Shown one piece after another: positions 1 to 50,500 of a stretch of DNA of 64,000 nt. The notes below the pieces were generated by a model. It was not told the origin of the DNA. It saw nothing but the letters and a program-made list of their open reading frames with translations, and did not search any database. The translations under genes and the position numbers were made by a program. This DNA comes from Ophelia neglecta. Lineage: Eukaryota. Position 1 is the stretch's first letter, and the number at the start of each line of letters is the position of its first letter. The DNA is taken from assembly GCA_965285935.1 (NCBI GenBank), contig OZ260667.1, positions 61,008,001-61,072,000 on the forward strand. The letters are read 5' to 3'.

Positions 1-2785
1 CACAATGTGTCCAGTAGGGTCCGTATTTAAGCCTCCTCGTTCACAATGTGTCCAGTCGGGTCCGTATTTAAGCCTCCTCGTTCACAATGTGTCTAGTAGG
101 GTCCGTTTTTAAGCCTCCTCGTTCACAATGTGTCCAGTCCTGTCCGTATTTAAGCCTCCTCGTTCACAATGTGTCCAGTCGGGTCCGTATTTAGGCCTCC
201 TCGTTCACAATGTGTCCAGTAGGGTCCGTATTTAAGCCTCCTCCTTCACAATGTGTCCAGAAGGGTCCGTATTCAAGCCTCCTCGTTCACAATGTGTCCA
301 GTAGGGTCCGTATTTAAGCCTCCTCGTTCACAATGTGTCCAGTCGGGTCCGTATTTAAGCCTCCTCGTTCACAATGTGTCCAGTCGGGTCCGTATTTAAG
401 CCTCCTCGTTCACAATGTGTCCAGTCGGGTCCGTATTTAAGTCACCTCGTTCACAATGTGTCCAGTAGGGTCCGTTTTTAAGCCTCCTCGTTCACAATGT
501 GTCCAGTCCTGTCCGTATTTAAGCCTCCTCGTTCACAATGTGTCCAGTCGGGTCCGTATTTAGGCCTCCTCGTTCACAATGTGTCCAGTAGGGTCCGTAT
601 TTAAGCCTCCTCGTTCACAATGTGTCCAGTAGGGTCCGTATTTAAGCCTCCTCGTTCACAATGTGTCCAGTCGGGTCCGTATTTAAGCCTCCTCGTTCAC
701 AATGTGTCTAGTAGGGTCCGTTTTTAAGCCTCCTCGTTCACAATGTGTCCAGTCCTGTCCGTATTTAAGCCTCCTCGTTCACAATGTGTCCAGTCGGGTC
801 CGTATTTAGGCCTCCTCGTTCACAATGTGTCCAGTAGGGTCCGTATTTAAGCCTCCTCCTTCACAATGTGTCCAGAAGGGTCCGTATTCAAGCCTCCTCG
901 TTCACAATGTGTCCAGTAGGGTCCGTATTTAAGCCTCCTCGTTCACAATGTGTCCAGTCGGGTCCGTATTTAGGCCTGCTCGTTCACAATGTGTCCAGTA
1001 GGGTCCGTATTTAAGCCTCCTCGTTCACAATGTGTCCAGTCGGGTCCGTATTTAAGGCTCCTCGTTCACAATGTGTCCAGTAGGGTCCGTATTTAAGCCT
1101 CCTCGTTCACAATGTGTCCAGTCGGGTCCGTATTTAAGTCTCCTCGTTCACAATGTGTCCAGTAGGGTCCGTATTTAAGCCCCCTCGTTCACAATGTGTC
1201 CAGTCGGGTCCGTATTTAAGGCTCCTCGTTCACAATGTGTCCAGTAGGGTCCGTATTTAAGCCTCCTCGTTCACAATGTGTCCAGTCGGGTCCGTATTTA
1301 AGGCTCCTCGGTCACAATGTGTCCAGTTGGGTCCGTATTTAAGCCTCCTCGTTCACAATGTGTCCAGTAGGGTCCGTATTTAGGCCTCCTCGTTCACAAT
1401 GTGTCGAGTCCTGTCCGTATTTAAGCCTCCTCGTTCACAATGTGTCCAGTCGGGTCCGTATTTAGGCCTCCTCGTTCACAATGTGTCCAGTCGGGTCCGT
1501 ATTTAAGCCTCCTGGTTCACAATGTGTCCAGTAGGGTCCGTATTTAGGCCTCCTGGTTCACAATGTGTCCAGAAGGGTCCGTATTTTTAGGCCTGCTCGT
1601 TCACAATGTGTCCAGTGGGGTCCGTATTTAAGCCTCCTCGTTCACAATGTGTCCAGTCGGGTCCGTATTTAAGCCTCCTCGTTCACAGTGTGTCCAGTAG
1701 GGTCCGTATTAAAGCCTCCTCGTTCACAATGTGTCCAGTAGGGTCCGTATTTAAGCCTCCTCGTTCACAATGTGTCCAGTCGGGTCCGTATTTAAGGCTC
1801 CTCGTTCACAATGTGTCCAGTTGGGTCCGTATTTAGGCCTCCTCGTTCACAATGTGTCCAGTAGGGTCCGTATTTAGGCCTCCTCGTTCACAATGTGTCG
1901 AGTCCTGTCCGTATTTAAGCCTCCTCGTTCACAATGTGTCCAGTCGGGTCCGTATTTAGGCCTCCTCGTTCACAATGTGTCCAGTCGGGTCCGTATTTAA
2001 GCCTCCTGGTTCACAATGTGTCCAGTAGGGTCCGTATTTAGGCCTCCTGGTTCACAATGTGTCCAGAAGGGTCCGTATTTTTAGGCCTGCTCGTTCACAA
2101 TGTGTCCAGTTGGGTCCGTATTTAAGCCTCCTCGTTCACAATGTGTCCAGTCGGGTCCGTATTTAAGCCTCCTCGTTCACAATGTGTCCAGTAGGGTCCG
2201 TATTAAAGCCTCCTCGTTCATAATGTGTCCAGTCGGGTCCGTATTTAAGCCTCCTCGTTCACAATGTGTCCAGTAGTCTCCGTATTTAGGCCTCCTCGTT
2301 CACAATGTGTCCAGTCGGGTCCGTATTAAAGCCTCCTCGTTCACAATGTGTCCAGTCGGGTCCGTATTTAAGCCTCCTTGTTCACAATGTGTCCAGTAGT
2401 CTCCGTATTTAGGCCTCCTCGTTCACAATGTGTCCAGTCGGGTCCGTATTAAAGCCTCCTCGTTCACAATGTGTCCAGTCGGGTCCGTATTTAAGCCTCC
2501 TCGTTCACAATGTGTCCAGTCGGGTCCGTATTTAAGCCTCCTCGTTCACAATGTGTCCAGTAGTCTCCGTATTTAGGCCTCCTCGTTCACAATGTGTCCA
2601 GTCGGGTCCGTATTAAAGCCTCCTCGTTCACAATGTGTCCAGTAGGGTCCGTATTTAAGCCTCCTGGTTCACAATGTGTCCAGTAGTCTCCGTATTTAGG
2701 CCTCCTCGTTCACAATGGGGCGCATTGGGCCTGTATTTAAGCCTCTTCGTTCCAGTCGGGCCAGTAATTTGAACCTCCTCGTTCT
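1..2785. repeat. 41-bp tandem satellite (CACAATGTGTCCAGT[A/C]GGGTCCGTATTTAAGCCTCCTCGTT), ~66 copies, runs off the window start
   Basis: Unit starts at 1 and 42; head-to-tail without spacers; degenerates after ~2715. Confidence 0.98.
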
Positions 2786-3499
2786 CAACGCCTTCATTGA
2801 TTCTGCCAACACTTTCTCACAGTTTTACTATTGTAAACACGAATCTTGAAACACGAATAAGGCGACACAAAAAAATGTCAATAGTGTTGAAGGAATCGGT
2901 CGTCTTTGTGAGAGACGTCATACCAATGATAACTAGATCAAAGCCGTGGCCGCTCCGGAGGACTGAGGGCCGGGGGTCCGGGGTCCGGGGGGGGGGGGGC
3001 TGGGGGACTTGGGCCCGGCTAACCGAGTGCCTCGGGACAGGGGTCAGATTTGTGTGAGACACTGTTGTCGTCGCACCTTTCTAGTCTATATAGTGTCTAT
3101 TGTCGGAGCGACTTTTGCTCAAATGCTCAATATGGTGTTATTTTGGGGGATAGTTAATTGGACCTTACTTATGACCCTGTTTATGTGCTCTTTACGCCTT
3201 TCAAGCAAATTTAATTTAAATTTTACTGATTATAATTACACAGAGAATATAGCTGCTTCAATGGACTCACAATAGTATACCCTGGCCGCTGATTAGACAA
3301 TCCCCCCAAGCTGTATATTCTAAAGACCTATACAGGTAATGTGCTCTGGTTCTCTGGCCGGGTGAGATTTGTGTGAGACACCAGGAAGTCTACTGTACCT
3401 GCACACGCTAGATACTCTTTTCACCTGTAATGATAATTGGTGCTGCACGGCTTTCAAAACAACATCTTTGATCTTGGCTGGTTTCCGGAGATACTAGAG

Positions 3500-3671
3500 C
3501 AGCGGCGGAATCAGGGGGGGGGGGGGGCAAAAAATGGGCCTGGACCAGGGCCTATTTCTGGACACACAAAAGATAGTTTCAGAGGGTTGGTAACGGGGAC
3601 AATCCAGACATTGGCCTTGTCAGCCTTGGAAAATTTAGCCCCCCCTTCCTGAAATCCTGGATCCGCCACTG
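3500..3671. mobile_element. MITE with CAG(T/C)GGCGGA-type terminal inverted repeats and a 6-bp target duplication
   Basis: Left end CAGCGGCGGAATCAGG; right end CCTGGATCCGCCACTG; CTAGAG flanks both sides (3494-3499, 3672-3677); no ORF. Confidence 0.75.
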
Positions 3672-4134
3672 CTAGAGTCTCCTTGGTTAGTATACTCTGG
3701 TCCCCTGTGAGACGTTTGATCAGCGGTAATCTAGATTGGTTCCCTGCTATTTACTTTGATGCTATTTTATGAATGAATTGAGCTGGTATGTCTGTCTTTG
3801 TAAGCGGTACGTTCCCGTGTACCCCCCCCCCCCTCCCCTCCCCCGACTGTTTCCAGAGCGCGTGGACAGGTGGAAATGTGATAATTTCTTCAAGCTCGCA
3901 TTGAAAAATAAGTGTCAACCTAACCTATCCTTTTTAATATGTGGTTGCCTATGCATTTGTCTTTAAGTGGAACACAGCAGCTAAGTCTGAACAATGTCAT
4001 GAATAGTTGAAAAACGACCAGTTAGGTTCGCGATTTAACCTGTAAGAGGTTTTAATGACGTCCCTGCAACCTCCACCCTCCCTCCACGCAGTTCAGTCAC
4101 TAATAGCCGGTAATCACGGCCCAGACGGTATTAT

Positions 4135-4290
4135 CCGCGTTTAGTACCGACGACAACGAATTCCGCCATGCCGGATATGGCTTAAGCCGTGTTTTAGATC
4201 CGACAATACCGGTCTTGACCATACCGGAAATGGTGCCAGCCGTGTTTTAGATGCGATAACAACGGATTTGTCCAGGCCGGAAATGATCAT
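4135..4290. repeat. Three degenerate ~53-bp tandem units, each ending in CCGGA(A/T)ATG
   Basis: Unit starts at 4135, 4187 and 4240; CCGTGTTTTAGAT and CCGGAAATG recur. Confidence 0.7.
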
Positions 4291-4971
4291 AATTGAGTTT
4301 TGATTTGGCTATAAAAGACCAAATTGCCCCTTAAAACTGCTTCAAAGGTGTTTGGAGAGTAGACACAATATTTATCGGTCAAAGCTGTTTCGTACACCGG
4401 ACACAAGTCGGTACTAATCTCATGAACGAGGTCGATTCTCTTGCCTGACAACCGACCGGGTTAGCGGGCGGATTAGAAGGGTGGTGGGAACTGGGATCAG
4501 GACTTATTTTCCTTCGACAGTTTCCCGACTCTGTTTTAATGGCGATTAAACAGGCGAGAGCCCCAAAATCGTGCCCCTGTACCCACCCTCCCTAAATCCG
4601 CGCCTCTGTACCTACCAGCGCGTGCTCAACTCTTGAAAACGTCTGCCAAATTCCTTTCTACGCCGGAAACGGAAATATGGATTGACTGGGGCATGCAGCT
4701 TTAGGATTTAACAAGCCACGTTTTAATGGTGTTCTGTCGGTTCAGTGGGGGCGATCGGATGCCGAGATACATGTCACGCGAGCGGAGCAATAATTGGCCT
4801 CTGTATATGACTGAGTGTGTTGTGAGGGTATTGTCCTCACACAACATGGCGTGTGGAGGGCAGCAGTCAACACAGTCAATCATGATTCAGGAGAGATTCC
4901 ATAAGGTCGCCGTCAAAACTCGGACAGATAGTTAATTAGACATATGGGATGTAGAGAGACAGGAATCTTAA

Positions 4972-5322
4972 TAATGTAAAATAAGGCGTGCAGTCAACCA
5001 TGACCTATTCAATGTTAAAACAAGGCGTGCAGTCGACCATGACCTGTTTAATGTTAAAACAGGGAATGCAGTCGACCATGACCTGTTCAATGTTAAAACA
5101 GGGAATGCAGTCGACCATGACCTGTTCAATGTTAAACACGGCGTGCAGTCGACCATGACATGTTTAATGTTAAAACACGGAATGCAGTCGACCATGACCT
5201 GTTTAATGTTAAAACACGGAATGCAGTCGACCATGACCTGTTTAATGTTAAACCACGGCATGCAGTCGACCATGACCTGTTTAATGTTAAACCACGGCAT
5301 GCAGTCGACCATGACCTTTTTA
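4972..5322. repeat. 39-bp minisatellite (AATGTTAAAACA[A/C]GG..TGCAGTCGACCATGACCTGTTT), ~9 copies
   Basis: Unit starts at 5011 and 5050; explains the 13-aa periodic ORFs in several frames. Confidence 0.95.
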
Positions 5323-5743
5323 ACAACTTGTAAATGGAACACTCTTGTTATTGCTAAGCTCTTGTTTGGTCAGATCCTACTTAGAATTTTACAATCCGAA
5401 TGCGGCGTTCCCCTAATATTAACACCAGGTGGCTCCAGGTGTGCTGTATGAATATTTACGTAGTTTTTAATTACTGAACATAATGTTAATTCTTCTGTAT
5501 TCATACTACTGGTGTAACTTGTACTACTCAAGTGAAGTTTTTCATCACTTGGAGGGATGGCCAACATTTTTACTCTGATTATTGTATTCTATCAAATAAA
5601 TAGAATATTCCAGAACACCACGAGTCTCGTTTGGAGCTCCTCACTTGACCGATGGCGATATTTTCATAGTTTGCTTCCCTCCGTATTCTCCAGATAGAGG
5701 CGCACTCTATTGTTCCATTAAGACATGTTTCTTTGTTTCGCAG

Positions 5744-6149
5744 GCGGCCACATGGAGAGTTTTAAGTTCCTGTTGAAGCGAGGCGCCCGGGTGTGTTCGG
5801 CCCTCAACGGGTCGACTTTACTGATGGAAGCCGTGGACAAGAACAAGGCGGAGTTCGTCAAGCAGATCGTGAACACCAGCAAGACGCTGGGCATCGACAT
5901 CAACCAGAAGGACAAGGACGGAAACAACGCGCTCTTCTACGCAGCCGCCGCCGGAAATGTGGAGCTCTTCAGACGCCTGCTGGAGGCGGGCTGTGTGGTG
6001 GAGTGTGACTTACATAACCGGACGTTATTGACGCAAGCGGCCCTTCATGGCCACTTAGAAATGGTTCAATACGTGGTGAATAACAGTCTGGCGCTGGGAG
6101 TGGACGTCTGTCAACTGGACAAGGACGGGCGGAACGCCATATACTACTG
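5744..6149 (+). CDS. Internal exon, ankyrin repeats (xGHMESFKFLLKRGA...KDGNNALFYAAAAGNVELFRRLLEAG...KDGRNAIYY)
   Basis: Acceptor tttctttgtttcgcag ends at 5743; donor TG|gtaagt at 6150; ANK consensus motifs; GC3-rich codons. Confidence 0.93.
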
Positions 6150-9100
6150 GTAAGTAGTAACATATCAGATTTAACTGTTATACTCCATACTAGTATGTTT
6201 ACACATGACTGGTCTAGGTTTTCACAAATCGTATTATATTCATTTTTCAATGGTCCGTTAAAGGACATTGCAAGAAATACAAGATTTCTGTTTCCACAGT
6301 TCCCTTCCTTAACATATTTAGCGTTTTCTTTAATGCATAATGCAAGATGAAAAAATGTGTTTCCTACGAAACTATTTCCACCCTTGTATGAACCTCTATG
6401 ACTCCTTGTGGAATGTTCCAAATCCATAAGGGACCTTGTCCAAACCGACCTCCCGCCCTCCTGCCACCCCACAACAATAAACCCTGCTGTTGTTTACTTG
6501 TAGTGGTATACGTGTTTATCGTTTCTTTCAGCGTGGAAGGCGATCATGTCCAGGTGCTCGAGTATCTTGTCCAATATGGCGTCCCTCTAGTCACAGACGC
6601 TGCCGGAAAGACTAATCTCATGCAGGCTGCGCGCGCAGGTCGACAGGACATAACTAAATTTATACTAAAACACCGACACCAACTTGCCCTGGACATAAAC
6701 GCGATTGACAAGAGTGGTGAAAACGCCTTGTTTTACGCTGCTAGGTCAAAGTGTGTTCCGGTCGTAGACTCGTTGCTGAGCAACCACATTACTATTACAG
6801 ACAACCTCGCTGGGGTCAGTGTCCTCTCTCAGAGCATGGCGGACGGAAACGAGGCTGTAGTGGAAACCATTTTGGGCCATCCGGATGTAAACATGGCGTC
6901 TGTTGTCAATGGCAAGGACGTCAAGGGTCGGACTACCTTACACCACCTGGTGCAGAGAGGAGAACTACAGAGACTAGTAAATCTCGGGAAATACTACTCA
7001 CCCCAGTTCGACAGCGACCTCGGTGGGACTACACTACTTATGACCGCTTGTAAACACAACGAAAACATGGACATTATCCGGTATCTGTGTGAAACAATGA
7101 AGGTCGACCTCTACAGGACAGACAACCGCCGCAGGACGGCGCTGTACTACGCCGTGGAATCTTCTAGTCTCCCCGCAGTCGACTTCCTAATCCAGCATAG
7201 TAGTAACCAAGACAGGAATAGTAATAACTACGATGTGCCTAACGGTATAGGAGATAGTGATAGTGGCATGTGTGATACCATGAGTAGTGTATCTAGCGAG
7301 GCAAGTAGTATAGTGGGTGAGGCACCCCTTATCAATCTTGGCGAAGATACAAGTTGTATGTGTTGCTCTCCAGACAAAATATTACCGACAGGGGTCACCA
7401 CGACTCCCCTATATAACACTGCCAAAAGTATATTGGACAGCGACGTGGACGGTTTCTCGCCTCTCATGGTCGCCGTGGTAACCGGCAATAAATATATCGT
7501 GGAGATCCTCTTGAGATCTCGTTCGGGACGAGAGTTGGTGAAATGCCAGGACTGTCGAGGTCGTACAGCGTGTCATTACTGTGCGAATCACGGCTATCTG
7601 TCCATTATGGAGATGATAGTGACGACAGGTGGCGCTGTAGATGTCCAGGACGCCGAGGGCCTGACGGCGGCCATGTTAGCCGCGTCTCACGGGCGGTCAC
7701 GTGCTCTTGCTTATCTGCTGCGTGTCGGCTGTGACCTTGAGCTTGTAGACACGTCACAACGGAACGCACTCCATCATTGCTTCTCCGGGACTCCTACTCT
7801 GCGCTGTGTTCGACTACTACTCCGCTGTGGCGTCAAGGTTAACCAGCGTGACCTTGGAGGGCGGACACCGCTAATGGCGGCCTGTGGACTATGTTCTAGG
7901 ACGCAGATCGCCGTAATCAGGAGCCTGGTGGAGGCGGGAGCCGACCCCGTCCTTCAAGACTCGGAGGGAAGGGACGCCTTTGACCACTGTCCCTTCGACA
8001 ATGAATACGTCAAGGGCCTACTCAGGGAACACGTGGGTAAGTAGTATAATACACTTCTACAATGTAAGTAGTATAATATACTTCGGCATTGCGGACAGGG
8101 TAGTAGTATAATACACGTCTATACTGCTACTGGAAAGGTCGAGTGTGTACTATAATGCCCTTCTATACTTCGTAGTTAACGGTCTGGTTTGCACATACAT
8201 TTGCATAATACACATGTATACTGTTTAGTTAATGGGTATACTTCTCACTGCACAGCCAGGTTAGTAGTATAATACTACTTGTTTACAAGATTTATAAAGT
8301 ACTTTGCATATATTTTTTATTCTACCTAACTATAAACAAATTGGTTACAAATAGTTTAATGTTATTATTATACAATTATCTTAATATGATTTTCATTTCT
8401 TTCAATTAGCCTTTGCAACTTATCTTTTCAGCTTTTATTCAAGTATCATTTATTTGTATCTTTAGGTCAATAACCGTTTTTGAATTGTATTAAGTTAAAT
8501 GCATGGCTAAAAGTAGCGGCAGGTTATAAGTTTAAAACACAGATGAACATTAAAAATGTCTAAATGGTGGACGCCCAATGTCTCGGCTAGAAAGTAAAAA
8601 CATACCATTAGTTTTGTAATTGAGTAACTAAAGATTCCATACTGTATGGATGTCCAATTTCGAAGTTGGGTAAAGTATTTTCTTCACACACATACACAAG
8701 CTCGTAGTAATGAGGCTCGAGTCTATGATGAATGTCTGGCAAATATCAGTTATTAAAAAAAGACAGGCATACACTGCTGGATGATGTCAATGTGGATTAA
8801 GTGCGAGCTTTATTGACAAATCTACTCATGGTAGCTTACAGTACAATGCAGCCACCACCCACTGTCTGATTTACCACCACCCCATGTCAACATGCTGTCT
8901 GCCCTCTGTCTGGTCTACCACCACCCAATGATGCCTGTCTGTCCCTGTCAGGTCTACCACCACCCCATGTCAACATGCTGTCTGTCCCCTGTCTGGTCTA
9001 CCACCACCCCATGTTTACAGCCTGTCCGCCCCCTGCCTGGTCTACCACCATCCCATGTTTACAGCCTTTCTGCCCCCTGTCTGGTCTACCACCACCCCAT

Positions 9101-11474
9101 GTTTACAGCCTGTCTGCCCCCTGTCTGGTCTACCACCACCCCATGTTTACAGCCTGTCTGCCCCCTGTCTGGTTTACCACCACACCATGTTTCCACCAGA
9201 TCAAACACAACGTTACGTCTTCGCACGATTAAACACCAACGCCGTGGTGTCGTGGGTATGCCAATAAAGTCTGATTGTACTTTTGAGTGTTATTCGACGT
9301 TCTTTTATTTTCGTGACTGAGAACCAATCATTAGCTTCCGGCGTCGGCCGGAACCTGCCGGAAACTACCGACGGCAGCACAGCTCTTGGGCTTGGCGGTG
9401 CTTGACATTGAAAGCCTTATGTGGCGTGATTCATTTGTGGCAATCGTCTCTGGGCAGATAAAACTGATTGATGTCGTTTTTATACTCGGCTTATATTGTT
9501 GGAGAATCTAATGTCCGTAGTGTGACTTCTATACACTGGGGTAACCTCAATACACTGGTCGGTACTGTGCGTTCTGTATTTTACAAAGTATTGGGGGCCT
9601 TTTTTCGTGACGCAGGGGATGGGTGGTGGGAGTATCTTGTGCAGGGTGTGGTATGTTTGCGTGTCTCGTCTGAGTGGAAGGAATCTGCGGTTTAGTACAC
9701 TGTCGATCCCTAAAGCCAAGTCTGGGAGAGAGTGGAAGATTCCGAGTGCTCCCCCCCCCCCTCTCCCTTCTATAACCGACATATTGTTGATCGACAGAAA
9801 AAACTATTTCACCAATCGACATGATTAAAAAAAAAGAAAATTAAAAATCTAATTTACGAATTAGTCCAGTATTTCCTTTAATGCGTCAGTTGTACACATG
9901 TGTATTTGCAGGTTTCTCCTGCTTCGGCATCTAGATTTCTAATTTTGTTATATAATCATTCACTATTCATGTACTATATCAGTGGCATCAATAATTTTTC
10001 TTAAGGAGATCCATATAAGACACAGTTAGGAATATTACCCACTTTAATGGCGCCTGTTTCCCGTTCAAACGGGGTTTTTAACCTTTTTCTTCCCTCATCT
10101 TTCTTCCTTCCCGAAAACGTTCACAATTATTTCTCGCCTTCCAGAGATGGACCCCTACCAGCGCGAGGCCCTCACCCTTAACACAGACAGACTGAGGGAC
10201 GAGTTAGAAATGAACAGCGTGCTCCGAGGTCTACTCAGGGAGGGCATCTTCACCAAAACACTCAACTTCGAGGTAACTATATATAAACTGGGTCAGACGT
10301 CACGATGACGCTGTTTAAGGGGTATCTCTACCTGGATGGTCTGCGGAGTCATCCCCAGACCTCTCCTAGGAGGAGACACCCATCACTTACACTCTCTTTG
10401 GTATCCCAGACCCCCGCTAGGAGGAAACACCCATCACTTACACTCTCTTTGGTATCCCAGACCCCCGCTAGGAGGAGAGACCCATCACTTACACTCTCTT
10501 TGGTATCCCAGACCCCCGCTAGGATGAGACACCCATCACTTACACTCTCTTTGGTATCCCAGACCCCCGCTAGGATGAGACACCCATCACTTACACTCTC
10601 TTTGGTATCCCAGACCCCCGCTAGGAGGAGACACCCATCACTTACACTCTCTTTGGTATCCCAGACCCCCGCTAGGTGGAGACACCCATCACATACACTC
10701 TCTTTGGTATCCCAGACCCCCGAGGTATAAACTAGGTCAGCTGACACGATGACCCTCTGTGATGAGTATCTCGTCCCAGAGGAGGGTGTGATGTGTCAGC
10801 CCCCTCCCCAGGTCATACCCTTTCATGGGAGAATCACTTATCACACACGTTTGGAAAGCTTTATTGAAGGTTGAAAATTTGTCCTCACCCACAAGCTCCC
10901 CATCAACGTATGCCCGAATCATTCAATAATATTTCTTTCGGAGCAGATTATTTATGATCGTTTATGACAGAGGGATGGATATTTTCTCGGCAGAAAGCTC
11001 TCTCCAAAAAAGGTCGCCTTGAAATGCCCTTCAACAAAGCCGACATCCATGGCCAGATGCCTAAATCTCCATTGTTTGATTCAACACGTTGTCATATCTG
11101 ACAGCGCGCATTGTTTATATCTTGGAGTATATTGAGTTAAGAGCCATGCCTCCTCTCTCCTGTTGATTTTATTGATTTAAGAACATTGCGTTCTGTCTAA
11201 TATATGTCATCTAGAAACTATCACTTCTAGACAGCAAACCTCCGTTTTAATGAAAACCTGTCCTCGTCACTGTTTAACCATGAAACCATTGCCCTTTCAG
11301 GTTATGAAGCGCCCTCCAGCGGAGCGAGTGGACCGTCTAATAGAGTTGTTGTGTTTCCGCGGACAGAGGGCGTTCCGGTCGCTGTGTAAGGTGCTCAAGG
11401 ACCTCCACCAGGTGGAGCTAGCGTGCGAACTACTTAAAGAGGCCTATAGGAAGGAAGAAGAGATTTTCTGGTAA
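5744..11474 (+). CDS. Spliced gene model (5'-partial): ankyrin-repeat protein with C-terminal CARD; join(5744..6149,6532..8036,10145..10272,11301..11474), 736 aa visible
   Basis: All three internal introns are GT-AG with polypyrimidine acceptors. Phases match at each junction (TG|C=Cys, G|AG=Glu, phase 0). The 2211 in-frame nt end at TAA 11472-11474. The ANK-to-CARD join is predicted, not shown by transcripts. Confidence 0.75.
6532..8036 (+). CDS. Large exon, ~12-13 ankyrin repeats with an ~80-aa Ser/Asp-rich insertion
   Basis: Acceptor tttctttcag ends at 6531; donor G|gtaagt at 8037; motifs such as GRTTLHH, GFSPLMVAV, GRTPLMAAC, LVEAGADP. The ORF-track N-terminus (6398-6531) is intronic. 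Confidence 0.95.
8861..9192. repeat. 44-bp intronic minisatellite (CTGTCTGCCCCCTGTCTGGTCTACCACCACCCCATGTTTACAGC), ~7-8 copies
   Basis: Direct tandem repetition; generates frame-cycling ORFs at 8892-9320. Confidence 0.93.
9263..9312 (+). terminator. Candidate intronic polyadenylation signal (AATAAA plus downstream U/GU-rich tract)
   Basis: AATAAA at 9263-9268 followed by TTTTGAGTGTTATT and TTCTTTTATTTT; motif evidence only. Confidence 0.35.
9320..9400 (+). promoter_or_regulatory. Promoter-like element: CCAAT box plus three ETS-type CCGGAA sites in a CpG-dense patch
   Basis: CCAAT 9324-9328; CTTCCGG 9335-9341; CCGGAA 9348-9353 and 9358-9363; motif evidence only. Confidence 0.4.
10145..10272 (+). 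CDS. CARD exon 1 (E-MDPYQREALTLNTDRLRDELEMNSVLRGLLREGIFTKTLNFE); absent from the ORF track
   Basis: Long polypyrimidine tract ending ccag at 10144; ATG at 10147; donor GAG|gtaact at 10273; matches the CARD helix 1-3 pattern. Confidence 0.85.
10351..10722. repeat. 51-bp intronic minisatellite (ATCCCAGACCCCCGCTAGGAGGAGACACCCATCACTTACACTCTCTTTGGT), ~7 copies
   Basis: Unit starts at 10403 and 10454; explains the 17-aa periodic ORFs on both strands. Confidence 0.95.
11301..11474 (+). CDS. CARD exon 2 / terminal coding exon (VMKRPPAERVDRLIELLCFRGQRAFRSLCKVLKDLHQVELACELLKEAYRKEEEIFW*)
   Basis: Acceptor gccctttcag ends at 11300, phase 0 matching the upstream donor; LLxxRGxxAF...L...LAxxL is the typical CARD helix 4-6 signature. 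Confidence 0.87.
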   Translation, partial: VMKRPPAERVDRLIELLCFRGQRAFRSLCKVLKDLHQVELACELLKEAYRKEEEIFW

Positions 11475-33819: not shown

Positions 33820-34649
33820 GGGATGGGGGAGGTAGGAGGGAGGGAGGGGATGCCGGGGGTGCAGGGTGAGGGGTGGAAGAGTGTGGTGGGGGGAGGTAGG
33901 AGGGAGGGAGGGGATGCTGGGGGTGCAGGGTTAGGGGAGGTAGAGTCTGGTGGGGGAGGTAGGAGGGAGGGAGGGGAGGCTGGGGGTGCAGGGTGAGGGG
34001 AGGTAGAGTCTGGTGGGGGGAGGTAGGAGGGAGGGAGGGGATGCTAGGGGGGCAGGGTTAGGGGAGGTAGAGTCTGGTGGGGGAGGTAGGAGGGAGGGAG
34101 GGGAGGCTGGGGGTGCAGGGTGAGGGGAGGTAGAGTCTGGTGGGGGGAGGTAGGAGGGAGGGAAGGCTTGGGGTGTAGAGTGAGGGGAGGTAGAGTCTGG
34201 TGGGGGAGGTAGGAGGGAGGGTGGGGATGCTGGGGGTGCAGGGTGAGGGGAGGTAGAGTCTGGTGGGGGGAGGTAGGAGGGAGGGAGGGGAGGCTGGGGG
34301 TGCAGGGTGAGGGGTGGAAGAGTGTGGTGGGGGGAGGTAGGAGGGAGGGAGGGGATGCTGGGGGTGCAGGGTTAGGGGAGGTAGAGTCTGGTGGGGGAGG
34401 TAGGAGGGAGGGAGGGGAGGCTGGGGGTGCAGGGTGAGGGGAGGTAGAGTCTGGTGGGGGGAGGTAGGAGGGAGGGAGGGGATGCTGGGGGTGCAGGGTG
34501 AGGGGTGGAAGAGTCAGGTGGGGGGGAGGTAGGAATGAGGGAGGGGAGGCTGGGGGTGTAGAGTGAGGGGAGGTAGAGTCTGGTGGGGGAGGTAGGAGGG
34601 AGGGAGGGGAGGCTGGGGGTGCATGGTGAGGGCAGGTAGAGTCTGGTGG
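33820..34649. repeat. G-rich ~63-bp minisatellite, ~13 copies, G-quadruplex-prone
   Basis: TAGAGTCTGG recurs at 33941 and 34004; several GGG+ runs per unit; extreme G/C strand skew. Confidence 0.95.
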
Positions 34650-37600
34650 CTTGGTTACTGGAAAGAAGATAGAAAGGAGCATCTTTTATGGACTATACTT
34701 TGAATGTTAATTATTTTATGTATTATAGTAGGTGTTCGGTTTTATTAACTGGATGCTATAACTTCTTATATCATGGAATTCGATTTATGCTTCATAAGCC
34801 ACTTTGAAGTTAATCTTCCTGAGAACAAAGCATCAAACTCCATCTTTAATAACCTCAGCTAATTTCGTCCTCTCATCGAAGCAGCTTATTACCGTATCAT
34901 CTCCAGAGATAGGATGCCTCTAAGGCCGAATTATAGCCCACAAAACCATTTAATGCTCTGCTCGAGATAATTATTAGTTTTGTAATAATCTGCTCAGTGA
35001 ATCTTTTGAGTGTGTATTGTGTTCGATTTGATTTCTGAGATGGAGTGAAGCAGGCTAAGTAGTAATAATACATTATAAAAGGATTTGATGTCTGTTTCTG
35101 AGGTGCTACCATTCAGATTAAAAACAGTTTATAATGATAGGTAAGCAGCAATGTGTATTCTTCTCGGATCTCTTCCCAGGCAAAAGCATCATATCGATTT
35201 GGCCCTGCCCGTAGCTTAACCAGACAGTTTTAAGGGGCAACACAAAACGCACCAAGATTGCAAGTGTACGACGTGTGGCTGCTCCTCGAATGGCTTGTTT
35301 AACACGAAACGCGGATATGTGTTTAACTCAGACATGCAAGTTAGGGATTTATCAGGACAATATATGGATTTAATGATGCCATTTTAGATCATTTTCATGG
35401 AAACCTGAAGGCTTTTCACGCAAGAAATAAGAGGTATTTGACACATTTGTTTGGTTAAGTGTATTAATGGTGTTCCGTTCAAACCTAATATAGCGTGTAT
35501 ACCGTAATATACTGAGAACCAATGTCACTGCACCGACTTGGGTGTTAACCATAACAATGATAGTGTTAGAACAAACAACAAAGATGTAGTGACCCATGTC
35601 TAATACCCCCAAGTTTCAGGACGATGACTTCATCGGACTAACTAACGGACATAATTGTCTGCACGCACTTATGGTAGCTCCCCGTACTCAGCGCTGCGGT
35701 GTTTTGCTTTCAAATATGATATTTCAGGGCATTGCTATGCTATGATATGTGCTGTGATCTTAACAACGTTCTATCACAGACGGCAGGGTCACAGTATCCC
35801 AGACATCGGATTAACTAACGGCCATAATTGTCTGCACGCACTTATATACCTTTAGACGGGGTGTGTTTGGCAGCTCAAATTGCTATTGGCTTAGAGTAGC
35901 TTCCTGTTTTCAGAGCTTCGCTGTTTGGCGCTGCGCTGCGAGAGAACAACATACCTTCCCTAACCCACGTGACACGCCGCTCCCAGTGAATGACCTCGAA
36001 CACCAAGTCCAGTTTTAGCGGCATTATTTGAAATGCAGAAGAAATTGGCTTTTTGGATCAGTGGTAGCCATATTGCATCTAGTGTCACAATCTTAATGTT
36101 TGCATAGTAGTTTGATCCAGAGCCAGAGCAGCAATCTACAGCGCAGCGCTAAAGCGCCGAATACAGAGACCTTATATTGCATTATTGGACTAAAGAAGCT
36201 ACGCCCGCACTTTTAGGACCGTGAAAAACAGGTTTTCATCAGAAGTGCTTGTCTGTGTCTTCGTGTCCTGTTAATAAAAGTATAGCTTCCGCAATCAGCA
36301 AAACTATCGCGTTTTACCAAAAGGCAGCTACTCTAGTGGAAATTGACAGTGTCGACTAGGATCACAGAAGTCTAAACTGGATAGGACAGTAGTTGTAGTG
36401 GCTGATACTATATTTGCTTTGTCTGCCGGTTGTCCACTTCCTATTATCTTTACCTTTGGTAATACGGTCTGTGGCCGTTCGTACAGACCAAAAATGAAAC
36501 TTTCAAAGCCAACACATTAGGTGCATCACTCGCGAATCATTCTGATTTGAGAACTCTAATGACCTCTTAATAAAAGTCTGTCTATGAATAGCCTCCTATT
36601 TGTTTACCATCCTGAAGGTGCCAAACTCAAATATCACCATACCAATTTGACACTATTGACGGATGAGAAATCTACAAGAAATGCATAATTCAGTTTCGTT
36701 TGATTAAAGCACCTACTTTGCATCGTCGTAGTATTATCCAGCACTTCTTACAAATGTTTCATCCTCTTTTCTGTATTCCGCTTATTGACAATATTTCTTC
36801 CTACCTGTGGGGATTATAATACTGCTAGTCATCCAGCGGCTCGTGTGTGAGCCCAAAGGTTCATCTATCGGCCCCGAGCGTAGTGTAGCGGAGCGAGGAG
36901 CCAAGACTAGAAGTCGTGCTACAACGGAAACATTACTGATCAAATTCCCAATTAAGTTTGTAAAAATAGCAAGTGGTGAAAATACTATATTTTCTATCCT
37001 CTTTGACGTGACACAATTGATCATCAAATTGATGACGTCACTCCTATATTTGCTTTCTCTCCAGGCTAGTATTGCGCGTTTAGGGTTGACCTCACAGTGA
37101 CATAGATCGGCCCTCAAATCTTATCTCTTTTATTTATCCGCCATTATATAAAGGAGTAGACGTCTGCATGCCATAGGGCCCGATTTATGCATAAAATGTG
37201 ATATACCCTCATAAACAACATTTGCCATGTACAAAGGCACACACAAGATACAGGTACACGTCTATGCTTTTAGACAAATGACAGTTGGCCCAAATTACAA
37301 TCCATCCGCTTCAAGGAAGGGACGTGAATAAATAAATGCATTTACAGTTCTCCGGGGGCGTCAATGTGCGTAATTGGCTTTCAAACATGATATTTCAGAG
37401 TGCTGCTATGCTATGATAGGTGTTGTTATCTTAACGACGATCTTTCACAGACGACAGGGTCACAGTATCCAAGACAATTTGTATCGCACCAGACAATTTG
37501 TACTTTGATGTGCATGAAAAGAAATAACACCCGTAGGTTCTGTAGAAACACCTGAGATAAAAATACGACTTTTAACAAGCTGGAAGTGCCCAAAGTTGTG

Positions 37601-47534: not shown

Positions 47535-50500
47535 TTGAATTGAAATTGAATTGAAATATTTTATTCAGTATTACAGCAACATTACAGCAACATTACAGGA
47601 GTACAGATAGGGAAAAGAAAAAAAAGGGCCGTAATACTTGGACGCCAGTAATAGCCGGAGCCGTTGGCACTGGCCGCCCTAAAAAATATATATACACAAT
47701 CGGTTACATAGATAACTACATTTGAAGATGTTACAATCTTCCTGATAAAGTAACAGAAACTCTAGAATAGACTAGGAGAAGCGGTATCTCCCCGATCAGA
47801 TACATGAGGATTCTATGTACAGCAAGGCGAAACAGGGTTTTAATTGCATTGAATTAACGGCAACAGGACATAGTCGAGAAATATACAAGTATTAAATACA
47901 ATAAACTGTTCTATGTAGTTAAAACGAGACATGACTTACACTTCTGACACACATAACAGTTTTTAATCGTACATACATCACTTTAACTTCCAATAAGATT
48001 TTTCTAGACAAGATATTACTTACACTTCTGACACACATAACAGTTTTTAATCGAACATATATCACTGTAGCTTTCAATAAGATTTTTCTTGACACTGCGT
48101 GGGTTTCTTACATCAATTCTAGGATTTTCAATTTTAATATTCACCAACATGCGATTTATTTTAAAAGATATACACTGTTTCATAAAATTTGTTCTCCTAT
48201 TGGATACGTCAATGCGAGTTCTATTTCTAGTGTTATATTGATGGCCAGATACCCTGGGTGCCAAACATTTAGCTATATATACTGGACAATCTCCGACCAG
48301 TGCCTTATTATACAATCTAATACTTTGCTTAACAACCATGTCATTGAGCTTGAGAATTCCAAATTTTTTAAAGAGGGGCTCAGTGTGAGCAATATAAGAA
48401 GTCTTGTCAATTATTCGCATAGATCGCTTTTGTAGCGAGAACAATCTGTTGGAGTTTCGGCCAGTCGAGTCATTGAACCATACTAGCAAACCGTACATGA
48501 GATGTGGTTGAATTAGTGCGTAGTAAATAGTTCTCAGGATATATGTTGGTAATTGATGTTTAAGTTTGTTAAGAATGCCATTTATTTGAGCTATCTTTTT
48601 ACATTTTGTGTCAGTGTTGCACTTCCAAGTGAGATGCTGATCGAACCAGATGCCTAAAAATTTATAGTCAGAGACACACTCTATCTGTTTATTGTTCAAT
48701 ACAACCGAAAGTGTACTACAGTAAGGGGGGAGAGGTCTATTTGCACTACGGAAAATCATATACTTTGTTTTAGAGACATTCATCCAACAATTGACTTTGT
48801 CAAATTCAATATTCATATTGAAAAATAAATCTAGTATATCAATATTTTTAAATAGCAGGCTGGTATCATCAGCGAAAAGAATGTCTTTGGAAATTTCAGA
48901 GGCTTCACACAGGTCATTCATGTAAATCAGGAACAACAACGGCCCGAGTATCGAGCCCTGAGGTACACCACAAATTAATTGAGTCAGCTCTGAGGAATGT
49001 TTATTATAGTGAACGAATTGTTTGCGATCTGACAAATAGTTTGCAATTAATTTTTTGCAGCTTCCCCTAATGCCGTAATACTCTAATTTGTCTAATAAAA
49101 TGTTGTGGTCCAGAGTATCAAAAGCTTTTGACAGGTCAATGAATATCGCTGAAACAAATGATTTGCTGTCAATACCACTGGCGATATAATCAAGCAATTC
49201 AATAGCCGCCTGTTCAGTGGAGTGTTTGGCTCTGAAACCATACTGAGAAGGATAAAGTAGGTCATATTTTTCGAGAAACTTATAAATCCTATTATAGATC
49301 AGCCTTTCAAACACTTTAGACAAAGCAGGTAAGAGCGAGATGGGCCTGTAATTGGTAAATCTCGAGTCATCCCCACTTTTAAATATTGGCAGTACCTTGG
49401 CAATTTTAGCTTTATTCGGAAAAATGCCACTCTTCAGCATAGAATTAAAGATGCTGGTCAATACTTGTGCAATAGGTTTAACAGACTGTTTTAGTAATTT
49501 TGGGGTAATGAAATCGAAACCGCAGCTAGTTTTTGGCTTAATTCTATCAACAACTTTTATTATTTCGGTGGGGTTTGTATCAGACATGTAAATACTGTTC
49601 ACAGTAGGCTGTTTTAGATAAGAATTAAAGGTACGCGATGACTGTATCTGAGCGGCAATAGAGGATCCGACAGTAGAAAAATATGTATTGAAGCCATTAG
49701 CAATTTGAATAGGATTACACAATTTCCTATCATTTTGATCCAAAAAAATGCTCTGCATATTATGGCTAACGTGTCCTTTGTTCAGGACTAATCTTATGTT
49801 GGCCCAAGTTAGTTTAATGTCATGTTTTGCGTCTTGAAATCGCTGATTCCAGTGTGCCGCTTTGGCAGCTGTTATCACCTGTTTCAACAAAGTTCTGTAT
49901 TGTTGATACCTAGTTTCAATTTGCTCATAATTAGGGAGATGTCTGCTCTTTGCACGCTGTCTACCTATTAGATCTCTGGTTTGGATAGATGTTAATATGC
50001 CATGTGTGATCCAGGGATCGATTTTATGTTTATACTTATTGAATCGGATTTCTTTTTCCGGAATGGTGTCATTCAGAGTTTGAGTAAATTTGTTTAGGAA
50101 GAGGTCATAAGCTGTATCCGGGGCCTCCTCGGCTACATTAATAATATGGTCCCAGGAAACGGCTGACAAAGCTTGTTTAAACAATTCAATATTTTGATCT
50201 GTAAGTTTTCTGTACTTAACAAACCTCGGGGGTTCCGTCCTTCTTGGTTTCAGTTCATTAATAAAAACGAAATTTAAGAAATGGTCAGAGAGCTGGGAAG
50301 TTAAAGTACCAGCTGTATATGACAGAGACGGATAGTACTTAAGGAAAATATGATCAATTAATGTTGATGAAGATTGTGTTACTCGAGTGGGCAGCGTAAT
50401 GAGAGGAATGAAACTATTACTAATGAACATATCCAGGTAGTTGTCAGTATCCTTGTGCGTGTCTGAGTTAAGAAGATCTACATTCATGTCGCCACAGATA

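What the first reader, a model, noticed from the sequence alone, without database searches (positions are those of the whole stretch)
5744..11474. Hidden ankyrin-array plus C-terminal CARD protein: candidate death-fold sensor/adaptor
Seen: splicing four phase-compatible exons gives ~17 ANK repeats joined directly to a 99-aa domain MDPYQREALTLN..L..EL....VL..LL.EGIFT...|...LIELL..RG..AF..L...L....Q..LA..L. Established: this is the CARD signature of the caspase-2/RAIDD/caspase-9 class. Familiar animal architectures pair ANK with a death domain (ANKDD1, NF-kB p105/p100, DAPK1) or CARD with kinase/NACHT (RIPK2, NOD1/2). I know no characterised ANK-array plus C-terminal CARD protein, but could not search. 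Inference: a repeat-based ligand sensor or scaffold that recruits an initiator caspase or CARD adaptor, with no NACHT/NB-ARC domain in the visible part. The N-terminus is not visible and may add domains.
Basis: partly seen in the sequence, partly recalled or inferred. Interest (0 to 1): 0.8.

Follow-up and report, generated by a model that had tools for sequence, protein, structure and literature searches.

The report
Ankyrin-repeat protein with C-terminal CARD
A real, intact worm gene, one of three recent copies, encodes about 16 ankyrin repeats joined directly to a caspase-recruitment domain; the family carries no source name and has the domain order of the fish inflammasome adaptor Caiap reversed, so it is a candidate extra caspase adaptor in animals reported to lack Apaf-1.

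Summary
Four exons with canonical splice sites and matching phases (5744-6149, 6532-8036, 10145-10272, 11301-11474) encode 16 ankyrin repeats plus a half repeat, followed within about three residues by a 99-residue CARD.

- Single-exon CARDs from other species pass Pfam CARD (up to 39.9 bits), and the two window exons abut on them without gap or overlap.
- A family profile finds the RAIDD, caspase-9 and Apaf-1 CARDs in the PDB.
- An AlphaFold model (pLDDT 87.7) superposes on the caspase-9 and Apaf-1 CARDs (TM 0.79-0.87).

In a related species, an mRNA contig joins the ankyrin array to the CARD exactly where that species' genomic contigs carry an intron.

The genome holds three intact paralogs (dN/dS 0.14-0.23), at least 150 CARD matches, many caspase-domain matches and no NB-ARC match.

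Zebrafish Caiap is a characterised CARD-plus-16-ANK adaptor, but its CARD is N-terminal and it is reported absent from invertebrates. This is therefore a new variant, and no family member looked up carries a name from any source.

Function is inferred: a CARD-mediated adaptor or scaffold. No RNA run exists for this species, and the 5' end is unresolved. The scan noted this same stretch once more (s1-747493), not other DNA.

The parts
5744..6149 (+). Exon 1. It holds a half ANK repeat, three ANK repeats and the first half of a fourth. It begins with two bases that complete a codon if an upstream coding exon exists.
   Evidence: Acceptor and donor read. Pfam Ank_2 E 4.6e-19. The exon is 97-98% identical in the two paralogs. 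Repeat count is from the sequence pattern.
5752..5754 (+). Conserved ATG, a candidate start codon. Starting here gives a 734-residue protein.
   Evidence: The ATG is invariant in the three copies and in two other species. In the related species the 666-residue ORF starts at this ATG and has an in-frame TAG 18 nt upstream in the spliced 5' end. This is not proven for this genome.
6532..8036 (+). Exon 2. It holds the second half of repeat 4, repeats 5-10, a disordered insert, and repeats 11-16.
   Evidence: Splice sites read. Pfam Ank_2 E 2.1e-76. AlphaFold model pLDDT 82.2 with 12 helix pairs plus a leading helix.
7223..7411 (+). Disordered Ser/Asp/Asn-rich insert that splits the ANK array into 10 + 6 repeats.
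   Evidence: pLDDT is below 50 for exon-2 residues 231-293. The stretch does not align to the 666-residue orthologue P0005. One paralog has a 3-nt indel here.
10145..10272 (+). Exon 3: the split Glu codon and the N-terminal half of the CARD (helices 1-3).
   Evidence: Splice sites read. It is 64% identical to the first 42 residues of the single-exon CARD in L016. It is conserved in both paralogs.
11301..11474 (+). Exon 4: the C-terminal half of the CARD (helices 4-6), a conserved tail, and the TAA stop at 11472-11474.
   Evidence: Acceptor and stop read. Pfam CARD positions 46-82, E 0.088 on this exon alone. It is 72% identical to the L016 CARD and has pN of 0.000-0.008 between paralogs.
8037..10144 (+). 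Intron 2 (phase 1). It holds a 44-bp tandem repeat at 8858-9192.
   Evidence: The intron is only about 390 bp in paralog B. A related species has an intron at the same codon position.
10273..11300 (+). Intron 3 (phase 0), inside the CARD. It holds a 51-bp tandem repeat at 10354-10722.
   Evidence: This intron is absent from the CARD exon of three other species. A CARD-caspase gene of this genome has an intron at about the same CARD profile position, 40/41.

Best explanation
Shown:
- This is an intact protein-coding gene of what is probably an annelid genome. It is one of three recent paralogs on the same chromosome-scale contig.
- Its product is a rigid array of 16 ankyrin repeats plus a half repeat, interrupted by one disordered loop.
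- The last ANK helix runs within about three residues into a six-helix CARD of the RAIDD/caspase-9/Apaf-1 type. The CARD ends in a short conserved tail.
- No NTPase domain is present.

Inferred:
- The protein is a CARD-mediated adaptor or scaffold of cell-death or innate-immune signalling.
- The ANK array binds a protein ligand, which could be a client, a caspase or a danger signal.
- The CARD makes homotypic CARD-CARD contacts that bring the complex to a CARD caspase (caspase-2 or caspase-Y type) or to another of this genome's many CARD proteins.
- In working logic it is closest to zebrafish Caiap with the domain order reversed. It arose independently, probably by capture of an N-terminal CARD exon.
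For: Gene structure. The splice sites are canonical and the phases fit.

Paralogs. C12:61.163-61.168 Mb (+) and C12:70.912-70.916 Mb (-) keep all four exons, all splice sites and open frames. dS is 0.10-0.14 and dN/dS 0.14-0.23. The CARD exons show 1-3 non-synonymous against 6-9 synonymous changes per pair.

Fusion is real.
- In a related species, contigs L009 and L021 carry one 666-residue ORF running from the ANK array into the CARD.
- Contigs L029 and L030 of the same species are 99.8% identical from the CARD exon onward but have intron sequence upstream of it. L009 is therefore spliced at the same phase-1 position as 8036/10145.
- A second contiguous ANK-CARD ORF is P0121.
- ANK exons followed by a CARD exon on the same strand also occur in genomic contigs L016 and L022/L023 of other species.

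CARD identity.
- phmmer with the orthologous domain finds only 28 cluster representatives among 1.84 billion proteins.
- Family members P0122, P0123, P0125, P0129, P0133, P0134 and P0154 pass the Pfam CARD cut-off (24.4-39.9 bits). The distant hits are multi-CARD and FIIND-CARD proteins.
- Profile A1 hits RAIDD (E 3.1e-6), caspase-9, Apaf-1 and CED-3 CARDs.
- The model has pLDDT 87.7 and a kinked helix 1. Foldseek's best hits, including the whole top ten, are CARDs or designed proteins built on the Apaf-1 CARD, with TM 0.79-0.87 and rmsd 1.6-1.9 A to most of the crystal and cryo-EM Apaf-1 and caspase-9 CARDs listed.

No other domain. Pfam finds only ANK and CARD on the 666-residue ORF, apart from one sub-threshold chance match (HEM4, E 0.019).

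Context.
- The genome has at least 150 CARD matches over the cut-off and 76 caspase-domain matches.
- A CARD-caspase at C2:30.28 Mb is among the nearest CARDs to this family.
- No NB-ARC match was found. APAF-1 is reported lost in annelids, with CRADD called their only CARD-containing activator (PMC11463336).
- For Caiap, the ANK domain binds active caspase-1 and the CARD self-oligomerises (PMC5662874).
Against: - There is no transcript evidence in this species. No RNA run was found, and the three runs laid are DNA contigs.
- The window's own CARD exons do not reach the Pfam cut-off separately, and neither does the full orthologous domain of P0005 (15.8 bits).
- The 5' end is unresolved. Exon 1 opens at an acceptor site in a frame that still reads Gly-His before the ATG, in this species and in L016. 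An upstream coding exon may therefore exist, although none was found within 30 kb.
- No binding partner was tested successfully.
- In a genome with at least 150 CARDs, many architectures may be evolutionary experiments with minor roles.
- Nothing shows whether the protein activates or inhibits.
Confidence: 0.6

Rival explanations
1. Inhibitory decoy. The architecture is the same, but the protein sequesters a CARD caspase or adaptor, as CARD-only proteins and ARC do in mammals. The ANK array would anchor or mask it, so it dampens signalling.
For: The CARD fold is shown. Nothing in the data gives the sign of the effect. The protein has no effector or NTPase domain. According to the review of PMC11463336, designed ANK proteins can bind and inhibit caspases.
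Against: The closest characterised analogue, Caiap, promotes caspase-1 activity. The family CARD is nearest to the activating adaptor RAIDD.
Confidence: 0.2
2. Two products. The ANK exons and the CARD exons would be separate transcription units, or the CARD exons would also give a CARD-only protein from an internal promoter starting at the Met that opens exon 3. This is the reading of the scan's other note on the stretch.
For: Exon 3 opens with Met right after the split Glu codon. That Met is kept in most family members and aligns with residue 1 of RAIDD. Four isolated copies of exon 3 exist elsewhere on C12.
Against: - The spliced ANK-CARD mRNA is seen in a related species at the same intron position.
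- A phase-1 junction is kept in all three paralogs.
- The orthologue in L009 has Val, not Met, at that position.
- The short 'CARD-only' database proteins start in translated intron, at pyrimidine-tract and acceptor sequence, so they are ORF calls on genomic DNA.
- An additional CARD-only isoform is not excluded.
Confidence: 0.1
3. NLR-like receptor. Undetected upstream exons would add a NACHT/STAND NTPase or another domain, so the visible part would be only the C-terminal half.
For: Exon 1 starts at a splice acceptor in an open, ANK-like frame. A relative, P0003, has at least 25 ANK repeats in a single 851-residue ORF.
Against: - The orthologous mRNA ORF starts at the conserved ATG and has an in-frame stop upstream.
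- No ANK or other coding match lies within 30 kb upstream.
- The duplicated block shared by the three copies starts only about 1.2-1.7 kb before the window.
- Upstream exons in L023 and L015 are ANK only.
Confidence: 0.07
4. Decaying duplicates. The three copies would be non-functional products of a recent segmental duplication.
For: Similarity between the copies also covers introns and flanks at 82-94%. No expression data exist.
Against: All 12 exons are open and have intact splice sites. dN/dS is 0.14-0.23 at dS of about 0.1. The family is conserved across several species, and the CARD is its best-kept part.
Confidence: 0.03

Closest known systems
[quoted passage not shown]
   Same: It consists of one CARD and 16 ankyrin repeats and nothing else. 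Its size is similar (744 residues against 734 predicted here). It is an adaptor with no enzymatic or NTPase domain. Its ANK domain binds a caspase and its CARD oligomerises.
   Different: In Caiap the CARD is N-terminal and the ANK array C-terminal; here the order is reversed. The authors found no Caiap orthologue in invertebrates. No CARD-bearing ANK protein appeared among the 120 best ANK relatives of exon 2, in a length range that includes Caiap. An independent origin is therefore likely.
CRADD/RAIDD (CARD + death domain adaptor of caspase-2)
   Same: The RAIDD CARD is the best solved-structure match of the family profile (3crd, E 3.1e-6). CRADD is proposed as the activator of CARD caspases in annelids, molluscs and brachiopods.
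   Different: RAIDD carries its CARD at the N-terminus and uses a death domain as its second module. Here the second module is an N-terminal ANK array. The sequence relation is at the level of CARD class only.
ANK + death-domain proteins (ANKDD1A, NF-kB p100/p105) and the Death-like-domain/ANK fusions of marine invertebrate expansions (PMC8195603)
   Same: They have ankyrin repeats followed by, or joined to, a death-fold domain. ANKDD1A appeared as a distant ANK hit (P0046). Fusions of Death-like domains with ANK repeats are described in lineage-specific expansions.
   Different: Their death-fold module is a death domain, or a Death-like domain with TRADD-N. Here the module hits CARD and not Death, by Pfam, PDB profile and fold.
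ANK caspases of parasitic flatworms and Alitta virens (PMC11463336)
   Same: They also couple an ankyrin array to the caspase machinery in lophotrochozoans. The paper postulates an unidentified activator with an ankyrin domain.
   Different: In those proteins the ANK array is the prodomain of the protease itself and there is no CARD. I did not test for any link between them and this family.

Membership tests
CARD (Pfam PF00619, death-fold superfamily) | Score above the Pfam gathering cut-off (23.9 bits) | tested here: inconclusive
Window exon 4 alone scores 13.3 bits and exon 3 gives no hit. The orthologous contiguous domains of P0005 (15.8 bits) and L016 (22.8 bits) are below the cut-off. Family members P0154 (39.9), P0125 (39.5), P0123 (31.4), P0134 (28.3), P0133 (27.8), P0129 (26.8) and P0122 (24.4) are above it. 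The window exons are collinear with these.
CARD (Pfam PF00619, death-fold superfamily) | Six-helix antiparallel bundle with helix 1 broken into 1a and 1b | tested here: met
   The model of the orthologous domain has pLDDT 87.7 and helices 3-11/13-19, 22-31, 37-45, 48-62, 64-76 and 80-90. TM is 0.79-0.87 and rmsd 1.6-1.9 A to most of the crystal and cryo-EM Apaf-1 and caspase-9 CARDs listed. The test was done on the relative from L009 (about 55% identical), not on the window's joined sequence.
CARD (Pfam PF00619, death-fold superfamily) | Sequence-profile relation to solved CARDs | tested here: met
   Profile A1 against the PDB gives RAIDD at E 3.1e-6, caspase-9 at 4e-4, Apaf-1 at 1e-3 and CED-3 at 0.024. 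No non-CARD natural protein scores below E 0.3.
CARD (Pfam PF00619, death-fold superfamily) | Homotypic CARD-CARD binding | not testable with these tools
   A co-fold of three copies gave no verdict. It needs pull-down or filament assays.
Ankyrin repeat array (Pfam clan Ank) | Tandem 33-residue helix-turn-helix repeats over the Pfam cut-offs | tested here: met
   Ank_2 scores 69.2 bits on exon 1 and 253 bits on exon 2. The model of exon 2 has 12 helix pairs plus a leading helix.
Caiap | N-terminal CARD followed by about 16 C-terminal ANK repeats | tested here: not met
   The composition is the same but the order is reversed: the CARD is C-terminal.
Caiap | Orthology to vertebrate Caiap | tested here: inconclusive
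None of the 120 best ANK relatives of exon 2 carries a CARD. The paper reports no invertebrate orthologue.
NLR / Apaf-1-type STAND platforms | NACHT or NB-ARC NTPase domain in the same protein | tested here: not met
   No such hit was found on the window exons or on the 666-residue orthologue. No NB-ARC match at E<=1e-5 occurs anywhere in the genome. The 5' end of this copy is not proven.
ANK + death-domain proteins (ANKDD1, NF-kB p100/p105) | C-terminal Death domain (PF00531) | tested here: not met
   The C-terminal domain matches CARD and not Death by Pfam, PDB profile and fold.

The most novel reading that the evidence does not exclude
The ANK-CARD family would be an NTPase-free sensor platform. 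When the ankyrin array binds a pathogen or damage ligand, or clusters, it would nucleate CARD assemblies and so activate caspase-2- or caspase-Y-type proteases. That would give annelids, which lack Apaf-1, PIDD and ASC, a second lineage-specific route to initiator-caspase activation beside CRADD.
Probability: 0.12. Interest if true: 0.7.

Novelty: new variant of a known kind. Interest (0 to 1): 0.45.

Why it matters
A recent survey of lophotrochozoan apoptosis reports the following (PMC11463336):
- Molluscs, annelids and brachiopods lost APAF-1.
- PIDD and PYCARD were not found in any lophotrochozoan.
- CRADD is the only CARD-containing activator in molluscs, annelids and brachiopods.

How their diversified CARD caspases are switched on is therefore open.

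This family was missed by annotation-based surveys because no member looked up carries a name from any source. It is a second, selected, CARD-bearing adaptor candidate with a RAIDD-like CARD. It sits in a genome that also holds a very large CARD and caspase repertoire.

It also suggests that the ANK-plus-CARD solution known from vertebrate Caiap arose twice, with opposite domain order.

It gives a concrete gene for pull-down, knock-down and reconstitution experiments in annelid models.

Tried and rejected
- Joined translation. All tests used single exons by reference or natural contiguous relatives.
- phmmer of the single CARD exons against the PDB. Exon 4 gave only chance-level hits (p73 tetramerisation helix, E 0.15) and exon 3 gave none. 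The halves are too short to be informative.
- RNA evidence in this species. No RNA run was found. The three runs laid are short-read DNA contigs that cross the splice donor unspliced, and no joint appears at 8036/10145 or 10272/11301. The higher depth on exons comes from paralog contigs at 95% likeness or more. It is not expression.
- Upstream coding exon. Five approaches gave no credible candidate within 30 kb upstream: ORF listing, tblastn with exons and with P0003/P0005, a motif scan, a short-query tblastn, and a donor-phase scan.
- Co-fold of three copies of the orthologous CARD. The tool returned 'no answer'. This is evidence neither for nor against self-association.
- Link to the ANK caspases noted elsewhere in this genome. 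The 705-residue caspase-domain ORF I fetched is an Ig-Ig-Ig paracaspase, not an ANK caspase, and is unrelated to exon 2. I did not pursue this further.
- Species of the related contigs. Searches for accessions SRR23076782, ERZ25069296, ERZ25069853 and Ga0393294 found no paper.
- Atlas feature search on the CARD. The best clusters are CARD families at scores of 0.84-0.85, below the 0.9 lead level. This is only consistent with a CARD.
Full report
**1. What is in the sequence**

The region holds four + strand exons with canonical AG/GT boundaries and matching phases.

| Exon | Coordinates | Boundaries |
|---|---|---|
| 1 | 5744-6149 | ends TG\|GTAAGT |
| 2 | 6532-8036 | begins C, completing a Cys codon; ends G\|GTAAGT |
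| 3 | 10145-10272 | begins AG, completing a Glu codon; ends on a full codon before GTAACT |
| 4 | 11301-11474 | stop TAA at 11472-11474 |

- Pfam gives strong ankyrin hits on exons 1 and 2 (Ank_2 E 4.6e-19 and 2.1e-76).
- On exon 4 alone it gives only a weak CARD hit (E 0.088, profile positions 46-82). On exon 3 alone it gives nothing.
Everything below uses single exons by reference or natural contiguous relatives.

**2. The fusion is real**

*Relatives with the same architecture*
- A word search with exon 2 found seven specific relatives (E 1e-95 to 1e-149) among generic ankyrin proteins.
- One of them, P0005, is a 666-residue ORF on a 2.3-kb Logan contig (L009). It runs from an exon-1-like N-terminus through the ANK array straight into a domain about 55% identical to exons 3 + 4.
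- A second run of the same study gives the same ORF (L021). Its contig ends just after an AATAAA signal.

*Proof of splicing in the related species*
- Two other contigs of that species (L029, L030) are 99.8% identical to L009 from the CARD exon onward.
- Upstream of that exon they carry unrelated sequence ending in a pyrimidine tract and AG.
- L009 is therefore a spliced mRNA. Its ANK-to-CARD junction lies at the same phase-1 position, inside the Glu codon, as 8036/10145 in the window.

*Further support*
- A second contiguous ANK-CARD ORF is P0121 (434 residues, JGI).
- Genomic contigs of other species show ANK exons followed on the same strand by a single CARD exon. In L016 the CARD is at 5592-5891, about 1.3 kb after the exon-2 equivalent. 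In L022/L023 the CARD is at 10001-10300.

**3. The C-terminal domain is a CARD**

- phmmer of the orthologous 99-residue domain against 1.84 billion cluster representatives found only 28 proteins at E <= 0.001.
- The close hits are short ORFs on genomic contigs. Seven of them pass the Pfam CARD cut-off of 23.9 bits (24.4 to 39.9 bits).
- The distant hits are true multi-CARD and FIIND-UPA-CARD proteins.
- The window's exons 3 and 4 abut, without gap or overlap, on the single-exon CARDs of L016 (64% and 72% identity) and of P0154.
- A profile of the family (A1) finds, in the PDB, RAIDD CARD (E 3.1e-6), then the caspase-9, Apaf-1, CED-3, cIAP1, CARD8 and CARD11 CARDs.
- AlphaFold2 on A1 gives pLDDT 87.7 and a six-helix bundle with a broken helix 1.
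- Foldseek's best hits, including the whole top ten, are CARDs or designed proteins built on the Apaf-1 CARD. Caspase-9 and Apaf-1 lead with TM 0.79-0.87 and, for most of their crystal and cryo-EM structures, rmsd 1.6-1.9 A.
- One family-specific feature is a conserved extreme C-terminal tail after helix 6, of the pattern Y-R-K-x-x-E-hydrophobic-aromatic-hydrophobic. It has low model confidence.

**4. The ANK array**

- The model of exon 2 (pLDDT 82.2) shows a leading single helix, six helix pairs, a disordered insert (residues 231-293, window 7223-7411) and six more pairs. The last helix ends at the exon end.
- By its sequence pattern, exon 1 adds a leading half repeat, three repeats and the first half of a fourth.
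- That makes 16 repeats plus a half. Only about three residues separate the last ANK helix from CARD helix 1.

**5. Copies and selection**

- The window is G000:C12:61008001-61072000.
- Two paralogs, at C12:61.163-61.168 Mb (+) and C12:70.912-70.916 Mb (-), share a block of about 13 kb that includes the introns.
- All 12 exons are open and all splice sites are intact.
- Summed per exon without joining, dS is 0.10-0.14 and dN/dS is 0.14-0.23. The CARD exons show 1-3 non-synonymous against 6-9 synonymous changes per pair.
- Across species the CARD is the best-conserved part: about 55% identity to P0005, against about 32% for exon 2.

**6. N-terminus**

- No ANK or other coding match lies in window 1-5743 or in the 30 kb upstream.
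- The ATG at 5752 is invariant in the three copies and in two other species.
- In the related species the ORF starts at that ATG. The spliced 5' end of L009 has an in-frame TAG 18 nt upstream, and L021 retains intron there.
- Starting at 5752 gives a 734-residue protein made only of ANK repeats and a CARD.
- In this species and in L016 the eight bases between the acceptor and the ATG still read Gly-His in frame, so a short upstream coding exon is not excluded.
- I put about even odds on 5752 as the start and low odds (0.07) on an upstream NTPase domain.

**7. Genomic and taxonomic context**

- The genome encodes the annelid erythrocruorin-linker domain. That agrees with other agents' unverified notes that it is an annelid.
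- It has at least 150 CARD matches over the Pfam cut-off and 76 caspase-domain matches at E <= 1e-8.
- It has no NB-ARC match at E <= 1e-5.
- The nearest CARDs to this family elsewhere in the genome are a 96-residue CARD ORF at C1:30.74 Mb, a CARD-caspase at C2:30.28 Mb, and a membrane-protein-like ORF with a CARD tail at C8:75.17 Mb.
- The CARD of the C2 caspase is split by an intron at CARD profile position 40/41. That is the same place as the exon 3/4 split here.

**8. Comparison with what is known**

- Zebrafish Caiap has an N-terminal CARD and 16 ANK repeats in 744 residues. Its ANK domain binds active caspase-1 and its CARD self-oligomerises. The authors found no invertebrate orthologue (PMC5662874).
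- The present family has the same two modules in reverse order. No CARD-bearing protein appears among its 120 best ANK relatives. I read it as an independent invention.
- The Met that opens the CARD exon aligns with residue 1 of RAIDD. That fits capture of an N-terminal CARD exon.
- Fusions of Death-like domains with ANK repeats are described in marine-invertebrate expansions (PMC8195603).
- A search of 8.4 million papers for ANK-CARD or CARD-ANK terms found only the Caiap paper.
- None of the ten family clusters looked up has an NCBI or UniRef source. Only one carries a name at all, and that name is the generic JGI label 'ankyrin repeat protein'.

**9. Mechanism**

Shown: gene structure, selection, domain identities, absence of other domains in the orthologue, and the spliced fusion in a relative.

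Inferred: the protein is an adaptor or scaffold. Its ANK array binds a protein ligand, and its CARD recruits it to a CARD caspase or another CARD protein by homotypic contact.

Annelids are reported to lack APAF-1, PIDD and PYCARD, and CRADD is called their only CARD activator (PMC11463336). A second selected CARD adaptor with a RAIDD-like CARD is therefore a useful candidate. Whether it activates or inhibits is unknown.

**10. Verdict**

The architecture and the CARD class are right, the claim of no precedent is too strong, and the function is untested.
- Novelty: a new variant of a known kind.
- Interest: 0.45.

Noticed in passing
window 1-2752; 4972-5323: A 41-bp satellite of 67 copies (92% matches) fills the start of the window and continues upstream. 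A 39-bp repeat of 9 copies lies just before exon 1. Both lie inside the block shared by the three paralogs.
   Followed up: partly
G000:C12:68133513-68133683(-), 68222927-68223097(-), 68262854-68263063(+), 68460313-68460483(+) (loci L017-L020): There are four isolated copies of exon 3 with its flanking intron sequence. No ANK exon or exon 4 lies within 5 kb on either side. They may be fragments spread by duplication or by a mobile element.
   Followed up: partly
G000:C2:30279217-30284440 (-), locus L026: This is a CARD-caspase gene. Its CARD lies in two exons split at Pfam CARD position 40/41, the same place as the exon 3/4 split of the ANK-CARD gene. A downstream exon carries Peptidase_C14 with a QACQG motif.
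   Followed up: partly
G000:C8:75165979-75166968 (-), locus L025:2979-3968: A 330-residue ORF has a hydrophobic membrane-span-like segment and a C-terminal CARD (32.9 bits). An upstream exon has a weak TNFR cysteine-rich match. It could be a TNFR-like receptor with a CARD tail where a death domain would be expected.
   Followed up: no
G000:C9:56596027-56598141 (+), locus L027:2528-4642: A 705-residue single ORF has three Ig domains followed by a caspase-like domain. This is a MALT1-type paracaspase architecture.
   Followed up: no
whole genome G000: The genome has at least 150 Pfam-CARD matches and 76 caspase-domain matches, and no NB-ARC match at E<=1e-5. It also holds single ANK-bearing open frames of 1,000-5,300 residues on C9 and C1.
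   Followed up: partly
window 48016-50892 (-): An intact 958-residue LINE ORF with an endonuclease (Exo_endo_phos) and a reverse transcriptase.
   Followed up: partly
window 11445-11471 (end of exon 4) and alignment A1: The family's CARDs all end in a conserved tail after helix 6, of the pattern Y-R-K-x-x-E followed by three hydrophobic or aromatic residues and the stop. The Tyr and Glu are nearly invariant and the model confidence there is low. It may be a docking motif.
   Followed up: no
window 34001-36000: GC skew jumps to +0.40 in this 2-kb bin. A 212-residue minus-strand ORF rich in Pro and Ser (34044-34682) lies there and looks like low-complexity repeat.
   Followed up: no
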